Below are positions 61,131 through 63,288 of a stretch of 63,740 bases of DNA, one piece after another. The DNA is from Octopus bimaculoides (Eukaryota). The stretch is from the NCBI RefSeq assembly GCF_001194135.2, contig NC_068992.1, positions 62,959,561 to 63,023,300 of the forward strand, written 5' to 3'. The translations under genes were made by a program, and so were the position numbers. The notes under the pieces are model-generated. The model saw only the letters and a program-made list of their open reading frames with translations. It made no database searches and was not told the DNA's origin. Position 1 is the stretch's first letter. Each line of letters starts with the position of its first letter.

Positions 61131-62325
61131 TATGGCAATAACATATCCATTCACTCATAATGTGTTCAAGCAGATTCAAACGTGAATATCGGGTCACTGA
61201 TGTTTCTCCTCATCATAGAGCACCTTCTCACTTTAAACGATGTGTATTCTTAACACACTCTGTTCACCATTATAAAGAAAGTGAAAATATCGCGGTGTTT
61301 CGACCTCGTTGAGTATCTCCTCAGTCAACGTTACCCCACCGGATCGGGGAATCTCACAAGAGCAGAGCATATTAACAATGAAATAAACAAACAAGTTATT
61401 GTTTGAATTCTCACTTTTCTGCCAGCACCCCATGAATTATCTTTTTGGTAGACATCACTATTCATCAACAAATAATTTGTGTGCTGACTTCTATAAAATG
61501 TTCATGTTTTCGGGAGATGTATCGGTCCAGCAGGATAGTCTTACTTCAGGAGACACAAAATGAGGTTAAAATACTGCGGTAACTCAACGTCCCCGCGCAC
61601 TGGTTAATCGCGTGTTATAAACACGCATCGGTGAAAGGGACGAGGTGTTCTCCGATGACGAAAAACAAAAGCGATCAGATATTATACGGCAGGCTGAGTA
61701 AGAGTTCGTTATTAGCGAAAGAGGTAGTATTAGTTGAAAATAGAATTTTGTGTATCTTATTTAAGGTGGATATACTGTAGAAGACCAGAACATCGTTTCC
61801 AACGGTAAAAATGCATTCAATCTCGCCTACTGACTATGTGCGACACAAGTGATTTGTTAATTAATTGCTTTTTTTTCTATATTAGTTTAGGCTAAATTTG
61901 TCTAAGCATGCTGTTCATAGTGAAGACTTACTATTGATGATGCTCAAAGAAGCAGAAATTTAGATTTAGCAATGCCATAGGCGCTACTCGACACTTTTCA
62001 TATGCTATTGGTATAAATCTGTGCTCTTTTAGCAATAAATGTCTATACGAGATGCTTTCTCGAGACGAATGTCGCAGTTTTGTGGTTCTCTACTGCATAT
62101 CCACGTTAAGTAAGGTATAAAGCATACTATTTCAACTAATATACATAAATGAGTATATGTGAGTGTATGAGTGCGCGCGCGCGCAAGTATGTGTGCGTGC
62201 GTGTGTGTGTGTGTGTGTGTTGTAGTGTTGATTTACTAATACGATCAGCAATACACACGCTGCAATGTAGCGTGAGATGAATATCGGGAATTATACATAA
62301 TCTACTTCGGATTTCCTAGTCGGGC

Positions 62326-62405
62326 AGTGCAGTGAACGGACGGGTTTGTATCGCGCAGCAACGTCAGGCAGTCGTTTAGGTATAAGCCCGTCTGATTACT
62401 GCACT
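62326..62405 (+). ncRNA. Pre-miRNA-like hairpin
   Basis: Arms 62326-62352 and 62379-62405 pair at 26 of 27 positions with no bulges (21 Watson-Crick, 5 G.U, one A.A mismatch) around a 26-nt loop. It lies in non-repetitive sequence. I do not recognise the mature sequence. Confidence 0.6.
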
Positions 62406-63288
62406 ATGTGAACATGAAACTTGAAGTAGATCGCGTATAACTATTGCATTCATTAAATGAAATATATGTGTGCGTGCGTGCGTGTGTGTCTGTCTGTGTG
62501 TGAGACTGTGTGTGCATGATGTATGGATGCATTGTTTTTAGTCATTAGATTGCAGTCACGCCATGGAACCGCCTTCATTACATTCATACTATACATCCAC
62601 AGTAATTTTCCTTAACCAATTATTTAAGGTTATCGATTACTCTCCCAGCTAAGTTACAGTATATAAAGGGCCACAAGACAACATATAGGTAAGCCGTGCG
62701 CGTATTCAAACACAAACACACGCACATATACATAAACATACAGATATATATAAATACACATACACATATATATATATATATATGTTTACATATAAATGTG
62801 TATGTGTGTGTGTGTGTGTGTATGCATATATATATNNNNNNNNNNNNNNNNNNNNNNNNNNNNNNNNNNNNNNNNNNNNNNNNNNNNNNNNNNNNNNNNN
62901 NNNNNNNNNNNNNNNNNNNNNNNNNNNNNNNNNNNNNNNNNNNNNNNNNNNNNNNNNNNNNNNNNNNNNNNNNNNNNNNNNNNNNNNNNNNNNNNNNNNN
63001 NNNNNNNNNNNNNNNNNNNNNNNNNNNNNNNNNNNNNNNNNNNNNNNNNNNNNNNNNNNNNNNNNNNNNNNNNNNNNNNNNNNNNNNNNNNNNNNNNNNN
63101 NNNNNNNNNNNNNNNNNNNNNNNNNNNNNNNNNNNNNNNNNNNNNNNNNNNNNNNNNNNNNNNNNNNNNNNNNNNNNNNNNNNNNNNNNNNNNNNNNNNN
63201 TATATATATATATCCGTATGTATCTATAGATGTATATGTTTATATGGAATGTATACGATGTATAGATTTACACAAGCATACACATATA

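What the first reader, a model, noticed from the sequence alone, without database searches (positions are those of the whole stretch)
62326..62405. Unrecognised pre-miRNA-like hairpin with a bulge-free 27-bp stem
Seen: AGTGCAGTGAACGGACGGGTTTGTATC pairs with GGTATAAGCCCGTCTGATTACTGCACT at 26/27 positions. All five non-Watson-Crick pairs are G.U and none is A.C, which favours selection for RNA pairing on the + strand over a decaying DNA palindrome. It lies in unique, CpG-containing sequence, matches no repeat in the window and has no TA/TSD ends. The 26-nt loop has its own AACG/CGTT sub-stem, and a small 8-bp hairpin lies 50 nt upstream (62256-62274). Known: coleoid cephalopods have an expanded, largely neural miRNA repertoire. 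Inference: a lineage-specific miRNA; candidate arms are approximately UGCAGUGAACGGACGGGUUUGUA (5p) and UAUAAGCCCGUCUGAUUACUGCA (3p). I do not recognise either, and I see no CNNC motif at the usual downstream position.
Basis: partly seen in the sequence, partly recalled or inferred. Interest (0 to 1): 0.75.

Follow-up and report, generated by a model that had tools for sequence, protein, structure and literature searches.

The report
Old 150-bp palindrome, miRNA unproven
The hairpin is really there and would fold very stably as RNA, but it is the top of a longer, decayed 150-base palindrome of a kind common in this window, and nothing available here shows that it is made into a microRNA.

Summary
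The described hairpin exists exactly as stated: 62326-62352 pairs with 62379-62405 at 26 of 27 positions, with 5 G.U pairs and one A.A mismatch. As RNA the + strand folds at -43.7 kcal/mol (z -7.6); the - strand reaches only -23.2.

It is the upper part of a 150-nt imperfect palindrome, 62291-62440, with about 58 pairs and no indels. Below the 27-bp core there are five A.C mismatches.

A neutral-decay simulation gives the observed strand asymmetry in 6% (one-sided) or 9% (two-sided) of trials. The G.U argument for RNA-level selection is therefore weak.

Two clear Tc1/mariner-type MITE palindromes in the same window are also single-copy there. "Unique in the window" therefore does not exclude a transposon origin.

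There is no Rfam match, no match in paper texts, and no seed match to published Octopus vulgaris miRNAs.

The decisive tests could not be run. These are small-RNA reads, genome-wide copy number and orthologous loci.

Best explanation: an old palindromic repeat relic with no shown RNA function (about 0.6). A real lineage-specific miRNA remains possible (about 0.1).

The parts
62291..62440 (+). Whole imperfect palindrome (150 nt, about 58 pairs as RNA). The arms are 62291-62352 and 62379-62440, in register with no indel.
   Evidence: I11; pair list; 43 WC, 10 G.U, 5 A.C, 4 transversion mismatches over 62 positions; + strand -67.3 kcal/mol, z -8.2; - strand -47.2, z -4.9.
62326..62352 (+). 5' arm of the 27-bp core stem. 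The candidate 5p product would lie at about 62329/62331-62350/62352.
   Evidence: The product coordinates are inferred from geometry only; no reads were available.
62379..62405 (+). 3' arm of the 27-bp core stem. The candidate 3p product would be at about 62381-62402 (UAUAAGCCCGUCUGAUUACUGC), with a 5' U at the weaker duplex end.
   Evidence: The product coordinates are inferred only.
62353..62378 (+). Apical region of 26 nt. It has weak extra pairing (62353-59 with 62368-75) and an alternative AACG/CGTT pairing.
62316..62319 (+). 5' side of a 4x4 internal loop; its partner is 62412-62415. This is the only candidate 'basal junction', 33 positions below the apical junction.
62412..62415 (+). 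3' side of the 4x4 internal loop.
62291..62315 (+). Basal extension of the helix, 5' side. It pairs with 62416-62440. Over the basal 29 positions (62291-62319, which include the 4x4 internal loop) G.U and A.C mismatches are balanced (3:4), as expected for neutral decay.
62416..62440 (+). Basal extension of the helix, 3' side.
62256..62274 (+). Small 8-bp hairpin with a 3-nt loop upstream. It is at chance level and is not considered part of the element.
62160..62222 (.). (TG)n/(CG)n-rich microsatellite bounding the unique segment on the left.
62466..62515 (.). (TG)n/(GTGC)n-rich microsatellite bounding the unique segment on the right, in the same orientation as the left one.

Best explanation
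The feature is an old, single-locus, imperfect DNA palindrome of 150 bp (62291-62440). Most likely it is the relic of a foldback or MITE-type insertion, or of a local inverted duplication. It has since decayed mainly by transitions, many of them at CpG sites.

By chance, and by the way it was noticed, most transitions in its upper half are of the kind that read as G.U on the + strand. The + strand would therefore fold into a long, very stable RNA hairpin if it were transcribed.

The palindrome, its extent, the mismatch spectrum and the folding energies are shown. Its origin and its lack of function are inferred.
For: 1.
2. Mismatches are 15 transitions against 4 transversions. Six of the 15 transitions lie at a CpG kept in the other arm, the signature of methyl-CpG deamination.
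3. Over the whole element the ratio of G.U to A.C is 10:5. In the basal 29 positions it is 3:4.
4. In 1500 simulations of neutral decay of a perfect palindrome, with the same number and type of substitutions, a strand asymmetry at least as large as observed arose in 5.7% (one-sided) and 8.9% (two-sided). The better strand folded at least as well as the observed + strand in 38%.
5. The same window holds two unmistakable Tc1/mariner-type MITE palindromes of similar size: 56451-56580 with TA|CAGTG...CACTG|TA ends, and about 12537-12640. Both are also single-copy in the window.
6. Non-low-complexity hairpins at or below about -42 kcal/mol per 110 nt occur about 6 times in 55.7 kb of this window. 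By contrast, 164 miRNA genes are annotated in O. vulgaris (PMC9699675), whose genome is 2.8 Gb (PMC10700109).
7. There is no Rfam family at gathering score. The best weak hit is mir-590 at 18.5 bits against a threshold of 65.
Against: - No second copy and no unambiguous target-site duplication was found, so a transposon origin is not shown.
- The outer ends (TTATAC...) lack the CAGT termini of the two clear MITEs.
- In the upper 33 positions G.U outnumbers A.C 7:1. The 80-nt core folds on the - strand hardly better than shuffled sequence (z -1.8, against -7.6 on the + strand). This is what RNA-level selection on the + strand would produce.
- There are no indels in 62 aligned positions despite about 30% non-Watson-Crick positions.
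- Transcription was not tested at all.
Confidence: 0.6

Rival explanations
1. It is a lineage-specific canonical miRNA gene on the + strand. Microprocessor would treat the 4x4 internal loop (62316-19/62412-15) as the basal junction. It would cut about 11-13 bp above it, and Dicer would release a duplex of about 22 nt. The likely guide is the 3p arm, UAUAAGCCCGUCUGAUUACUGC. The hairpin may have been born from an older palindrome whose upper 33 bp are now kept paired by selection.
For: - The + strand hairpin is very stable and well defined.
- There are 33 paired positions between the internal loop and the apical junction, close to the canonical stem of about 35 bp (the canonical length is from established knowledge).
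- G.U to A.C is 7:1 in that segment and 3:4 below it.
- The core - strand folds poorly.
- The 3p candidate begins with U at the A/U- and G.U-rich duplex end.
- A UGU lies at the apical end of the 5' arm, 62347-49.
- Octopus lineages are known to have gained many novel miRNA families, and the published set is stated to be an underestimate (PMC9699675).
Against: - No read evidence could be obtained.
- The helix continues for about 25 more pairs below the internal loop instead of opening into single-stranded flanks.
- There is no CNNC downstream and no UG near -14.
- There is no Rfam hit.
- Neither arm occurs in any searchable paper text.
- None of 12 candidate seed-site 7-mers is attached to an O. 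vulgaris miRNA in the stored, truncated supplementary tables of PMC9699675.
- The prior is very low: strong hairpins outnumber miRNA genes by roughly a thousand to one.
Confidence: 0.1
2. It is a non-canonical small-RNA source. If the locus is transcribed, the 58-bp near-perfect hairpin would be diced directly into heterogeneous endo-siRNA-like products. This is the kind of lowly expressed 'background product of the miRNA pathway', with no conserved targets.
For: - The duplex is long and almost uninterrupted, which makes it a better Dicer substrate than Microprocessor substrate.
- PMC9699675 notes that many such lowly expressed small RNAs are seen in octopus libraries.
Against: The proposal rests on structure alone.
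Confidence: 0.12
3. It is a double-stranded element inside a longer transcript, in an intron or UTR. It would act as a substrate for ADAR editing or as another cis-acting structure, rather than as a small-RNA precursor.
For: A long dsRNA stem specific to the + strand. Coleoids have very high A-to-I editing in neural tissue (PMC9699675 abstract).
Against: No exon or gene could be recognised in the window. No transcription data were available. Nothing specific points to this reading.
Confidence: 0.05

Closest known systems
Canonical animal pre-/pri-miRNA hairpins (MirGeneDB criteria), in particular the octopus and coleoid novel miRNA families of Zolotarov et al. 2022
   Same: - A single, well-defined hairpin.
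- More than 16 complementary nucleotides between the arms.
- A loop longer than 8 nt.
- About 33 bp between an internal loop and the apical junction.
- Possible 22-nt arms with a 5'-U guide.
- Marked preference for one strand.
   Different: - The helix extends to about 58 bp with no single-stranded basal flanks.
- No CNNC or basal UG motif.
- No sequence or seed match to any Rfam family, or to the O. vulgaris seeds that could be checked.
- No expression or conservation evidence.
Tc1/mariner-derived MITEs (Stowaway-like palindromic elements), as exemplified in this window at 56451-56580 and about 12537-12640
   Same: - A palindrome of about 130-150 bp with a short non-palindromic centre.
- Ends compatible with a TA duplication.
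- Single copy within the window, like the two clear MITEs.
- Sits in repeat-rich, apparently non-coding DNA.
   Different: - The outer termini are TTATAC..., not TA|CAGT....
- The arms are much more diverged (69% Watson-Crick, against nearly perfect arms in the MITE at 56451-56580).
- Folding is strongly strand-asymmetric, whereas the two MITEs fold equally on both strands (-66.9/-65.8 and -50.2/-49.8 kcal/mol).
- The family and its copy number are unknown.
Hairpin RNA (hpRNA) endo-siRNA loci of Drosophila
   Same: A long inverted repeat that would fold back as RNA into an extended, nearly perfect duplex.
   Different: It is much shorter (58 bp, against hundreds of bp). It is a single hairpin, not tandem. 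No small-RNA evidence exists, and the class has not been described in cephalopods as far as I know.

Membership tests
Canonical animal miRNA (MirGeneDB criteria) | An imperfect hairpin with at least 16 complementary nucleotides between the two arms and a loop of at least 8 nt. | tested here: met
   26/27 paired in the core, with a 26-nt apical region.
Canonical animal miRNA (MirGeneDB criteria) | Reads of 20-26 nt from both arms with homogeneous 5' ends. | not testable with these tools
Canonical animal miRNA (MirGeneDB criteria) | 2-nt 3' overhangs on both ends of the duplex (the Drosha and Dicer signatures). | not testable with these tools
   This needs read ends.
Canonical animal miRNA (MirGeneDB criteria) | A stem of about 35 bp flanked at its base by single-stranded RNA. 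| tested here: inconclusive
   There are 33 positions between the 4x4 internal loop and the apical junction. Below the loop, however, the helix resumes for about 25 more pairs down to 62291/62440.
Canonical animal miRNA (MirGeneDB criteria) | Auxiliary processing motifs: basal UG, apical UGU/GUG and a downstream CNNC. These are frequent but not obligatory. | tested here: not met
   No CNNC in 62403-62440 and no UG at 62313-62319. Only a UGU at 62347-49 is present.
Canonical animal miRNA (MirGeneDB criteria) | Conservation of the arms, with a variable loop, at the orthologous locus of related species. | not testable with these tools
   No cephalopod genome was reachable. The metagenome scans gave 0 hits and the protein-based routes found nothing.
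Any described miRNA family | A sequence/structure match to a curated model, or a seed match to a published miRNA. | tested here: not met
   - Rfam 15: nothing at gathering score. The best hit is mir-590 at 18.5 bits against 65.
- No paper text contains the arm sequences.
- None of 12 candidate seed-site 7-mers is attached to an Ovu miRNA in the truncated supplements of PMC9699675.
- MirGeneDB itself could not be searched.
MITE (Tc1/mariner or Stowaway-like) | Terminal inverted repeats. | tested here: met
   The whole element is an inverted repeat. This is met trivially.
MITE (Tc1/mariner or Stowaway-like) | A TA target-site duplication flanking the element. | tested here: inconclusive
   TA is present at 62292-93 and 62438-39. 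TA is self-complementary, however, and cannot be told apart from the palindrome itself.
MITE (Tc1/mariner or Stowaway-like) | Many dispersed copies in the genome. | not testable with these tools
   It is single-copy in the 63.7-kb window, but so are the two clear MITEs. A window this size would reveal only families of roughly 10^5 copies or more.
MITE (Tc1/mariner or Stowaway-like) | Characteristic CAGT-type termini. | tested here: not met
   The outer ends are TTATAC.../...GTATAA. A CAGTG occurs only internally at 62325, without a matching 3' counterpart.

The most novel reading that the evidence does not exclude
A young, octopod-lineage-specific miRNA caught in the act of emerging from an older 150-bp palindrome. 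Selection for RNA pairing would now maintain only the upper 33 bp (G.U to A.C 7:1), while the basal 29 positions decay neutrally (3:4). The 4x4 internal loop would have become the new basal junction for Microprocessor.
Probability: 0.1. Interest if true: 0.45.

Novelty: new member of a known kind. Interest (0 to 1): 0.2.

Why it matters
If it were a real miRNA, it would add one more lineage-specific gene to the already documented coleoid and octopus miRNA expansion: 90 novel families and 164 genes in O. vulgaris. It would also give a clean example of a miRNA born from a palindromic repeat. That would be useful but incremental.

If it is a decayed palindrome, as I think more likely, it is ordinary. 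Its value is then cautionary. In this repeat-rich genome, strong hairpins are about a thousand times commoner than miRNA genes. G.U/A.C asymmetry in a hand-picked stem segment is weak evidence, and uniqueness within 64 kb says almost nothing about transposon origin.

Tried and rejected
Neither was retried.
- Rfam at gathering score over the whole window, and at E<=10 around the hairpin, gave nothing meaningful.
- Literature:
  - The arm sequences occur in no searchable paper text.
  - The supplements of Zolotarov et al. hold no miRNA sequences, only seed-site k-mers. None of the 12 candidates matches a named miRNA.
  - The MirGeneDB 3.0 paper has no stored supplements.
  - No paper listing small-RNA run ids was found.
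- Copies elsewhere: two metagenome scans, one with the 3p arm and one with a gapped two-arm pattern, gave 0 hits.
- Back door through predicted proteins:
  - Five ORFs from the window are not on record.
  - A LINE-tail ORF found only one 57-aa hit. The protein collection therefore holds almost nothing from cephalopod non-coding DNA, and I abandoned the plan to sample octopus contigs for copy number.
Inspection of all stop-to-stop ORFs of 50 aa or more showed no recognisable host-gene exon, only TE fragments.
- Nested-MITE idea: I considered and rejected an 82-bp CAGTG-ended MITE inserted at 62325-62406. The flanks 62291-62324 and 62407-62440 are themselves complementary, and the 3' end does not mirror CAGTG.
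- CpG richness as a sign of constraint: rejected. CpG observed/expected is 1.45 in the hairpin (11 sites) against 0.86 for the window and about 1.06 in the adjacent 1 kb. The numbers are too small and the window is not CpG-depleted.

Full report
**1. The observation**

The 5' arm, 62326-62352, pairs in register with 62379-62405 at 26 of 27 positions. There are 21 Watson-Crick pairs, five G.U pairs and one A.A mismatch (62336/62395), with no bulge.

Folded as RNA, the 80-nt core has an MFE of -43.7 kcal/mol. Its z-score is -7.57, none of 200 dinucleotide shuffles does as well, and the MFE structure makes up 41% of the ensemble.

The minor details also check out:
- The AACG/CGTT pair is present in the loop.
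- The 8-bp hairpin lies at 62256-62274 (-11.4 kcal/mol).
- No CNNC lies downstream.

The small upstream hairpin carries no weight. Perfect 6-bp hairpins occur about 20 times per kb in this window.

**2.

The inverted repeat is much longer than 80 nt. The repeat finder reports 60-nt arms, 62291-62350 and 62381-62440 (I11). RNAfold pairs 62291 with 62440 and continues inward without a register shift.

The whole object is a 150-nt imperfect palindrome with about 58 pairs. It folds at -67.3 kcal/mol on the + strand (z -8.2) and at -47.2 on the - strand (z -4.9).

Comparing the arms position by position over 62 positions gives 43 Watson-Crick pairs, 10 G.U, 5 A.C and 4 transversion mismatches, with no indel.
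- 'No A.C' fails outside the core. Five A.C mismatches lie outside the 27-bp core.
- 'No TA/TSD ends' fails at the true ends. They read T-TA-TAC.../...GTA-TA-A, which is compatible with a TA duplication but not diagnostic, because TA is self-complementary.

**3. Is the G.U excess evidence of selection for RNA pairing?**

Only weakly. In the core, five transitions all falling in one class has a two-sided probability of 1/16.

I simulated neutral decay of a perfect palindrome with the same 15 transitions and 4 transversions placed at random. A strand asymmetry in MFE at least as large as observed (20 kcal/mol) arose in 5.7% of 1500 trials one-sided and 8.9% two-sided. The better strand folded at least as well as the real + strand in 38%. 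The hairpin is thus no more stable than a neutrally decayed palindrome would be on its luckier strand.

Six of the 15 transitions sit at a CpG that the other arm retains. That is what methyl-CpG deamination produces.

One pattern is still worth recording. In the upper 33 positions (62320-62352) G.U to A.C is 7:1, while in the basal 29 positions it is 3:4. The core folds on the - strand hardly better than shuffled sequence (-23.2 kcal/mol, z -1.8). This is what one would expect if only a Microprocessor-sized upper stem were under RNA-level selection. However, the split was chosen after seeing the data and the numbers are small.

**4. Context and controls**

The window is repeat-rich and I could recognise no host-gene exon in it. 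It contains:
- TA/TG microsatellites
- 25 N runs
- SINE-like and LINE fragments

A sliding RNAfold scan found about six non-low-complexity hairpins of comparable strength in 55.7 kb of unmasked sequence. Two of them are unmistakable Tc1/mariner-type MITE palindromes:
- 56451-56580, with TA|CAGTG...CACTG|TA ends.
- About 12537-12640, with CAGTAGTAAC... ends.

Both fold equally on the two strands (-66.9/-65.8 and -50.2/-49.8 kcal/mol). Importantly, both are single-copy within the window. The absence of a second copy of the hairpin in the window therefore says nothing about a transposon origin. A 56-kb sample would reveal only families with roughly 10^5 or more copies in a genome of this size.

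For scale, O. vulgaris has 164 annotated miRNA genes (PMC9699675) in 2.8 Gb (PMC10700109). Strong hairpins at the density seen here would number a few hundred thousand. I share it from the look of the SINEs and microsatellites, but I could not verify it.

**5. miRNA-likeness from structure alone**

Favourable features:
- A single well-defined hairpin.
- 33 positions between the 4x4 internal loop (62316-19/62412-15) and the apical junction, close to the canonical stem of about 35 bp.
- A possible 3p product, UAUAAGCCCGUCUGAUUACUGC (62381-62402), with a 5' U at the A/U- and G.U-rich end of the duplex.
- A UGU at 62347-49.

Unfavourable features:
- The helix resumes below the internal loop for about 25 more pairs. 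A canonical pri-miRNA opens there into the single-stranded flanks that Microprocessor uses.
- There is no CNNC in 62403-62440 and no UG around -14.

No Rfam family matches. There is nothing at gathering score in the whole window, and the best weak hit is mir-590 at 18.5 bits against a threshold of 65. Neither arm occurs in any searchable paper text. None of 12 candidate seed-site 7-mers is attached to a named O. vulgaris miRNA in the stored, truncated tables of Zolotarov et al.. MirGeneDB itself was not available.

**6. What could not be done**

All were out of reach.
- Read laying, tried with O. bimaculoides run ids taken from PMC8967140, was closed as well.
- Two metagenome scans found nothing.
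- Look-ups of five window ORFs found nothing.
- A translated-frame search found nothing.
- A LINE-tail ORF had a single hit, which shows that the protein collection holds almost no cephalopod non-coding sequence.

**7. Verdict**

The hairpin is real and far beyond chance. A palindrome is what makes it so, and palindromes of this size are a normal component of this window.

| Reading | Probability |
|---|---|
| Old palindromic repeat relic (foldback/MITE-type insertion or local inverted duplication) decaying by transitions, with no demonstrated RNA function | about 0.6 |
| Genuine lineage-specific miRNA | about 0.1 |
| Non-canonical Dicer substrate, if transcribed | about 0.12 |
| Editing or other cis-acting dsRNA element | about 0.05 |
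| Unassigned | the remainder |

The specific argument offered for it (all G.U, no A.C, no TA ends, unique) is weaker than stated. Interest is low unless read data show precise processing.

Noticed in passing
window 56451-56580: A clear Tc1/mariner-type MITE palindrome: TA|CAGTGGACATTTAAACAC...GTGTTTTAACGTACACTG|TA. It folds equally well on both strands (-66.9/-65.8 kcal/mol, z -10 and -13) and is single-copy in the window. I used it as a control.
   Followed up: partly
window 12537-12640: A second MITE-like palindrome (CAGTAGTAACTCGGTTT... / ...AAACCGATGTACTATTG) embedded in TA-rich sequence. It folds at -50.2/-49.8 kcal/mol on the two strands.
   Followed up: partly
window 51251-51380 (+): Another strong hairpin with even larger strand asymmetry: -51.3 kcal/mol on + against -27.7 on -. 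Its 3' flank resembles sequence at 50628-50702 (75% over 76 nt), so it is probably SINE-associated. It shows that strand-asymmetric hairpins arise here outside miRNA genes.
   Followed up: partly
window ~34290-34380 (-); 16441-16550 (+); 41781-41890 (-): There is a tRNA-like SINE head (GGCACGTAGCTTAGTGGTTAG...GGTCGTGAGTTCGATT; ARAGORN calls no tRNA). There are also two copies of another SINE-like unit that share a GCGAAATGCT...AGCATTTCGC-type hairpin. From memory these look like the abundant octopus SINEs; I did not verify this.
   Followed up: no
window 46194-46881 (-) and 47948-48193 (-): Degenerate retrotransposon fragments: a reverse-transcriptase piece with a YIDDIF motif broken by frameshifts, and a LINE C-terminal tail. 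The tail ORF had only one homologue (57 aa, E 2.5e-9) in the 5.8-billion-protein collection.
   Followed up: partly
window 62836-63200 and 24 other N runs (8063 N in all): The '199-nt, 97-99% complementary' inverted repeats that the repeat finder reports at 62821-63218 (I1-I3) are an artefact of an N run flanked by TA microsatellite. They are not a real palindrome.
   Followed up: yes
window 62160-62222 and 62466-62515: The unique 240-bp segment that carries the hairpin is bracketed by two TG/CG-rich microsatellites in the same orientation. I do not know whether this reflects a larger repeat unit.
   Followed up: no
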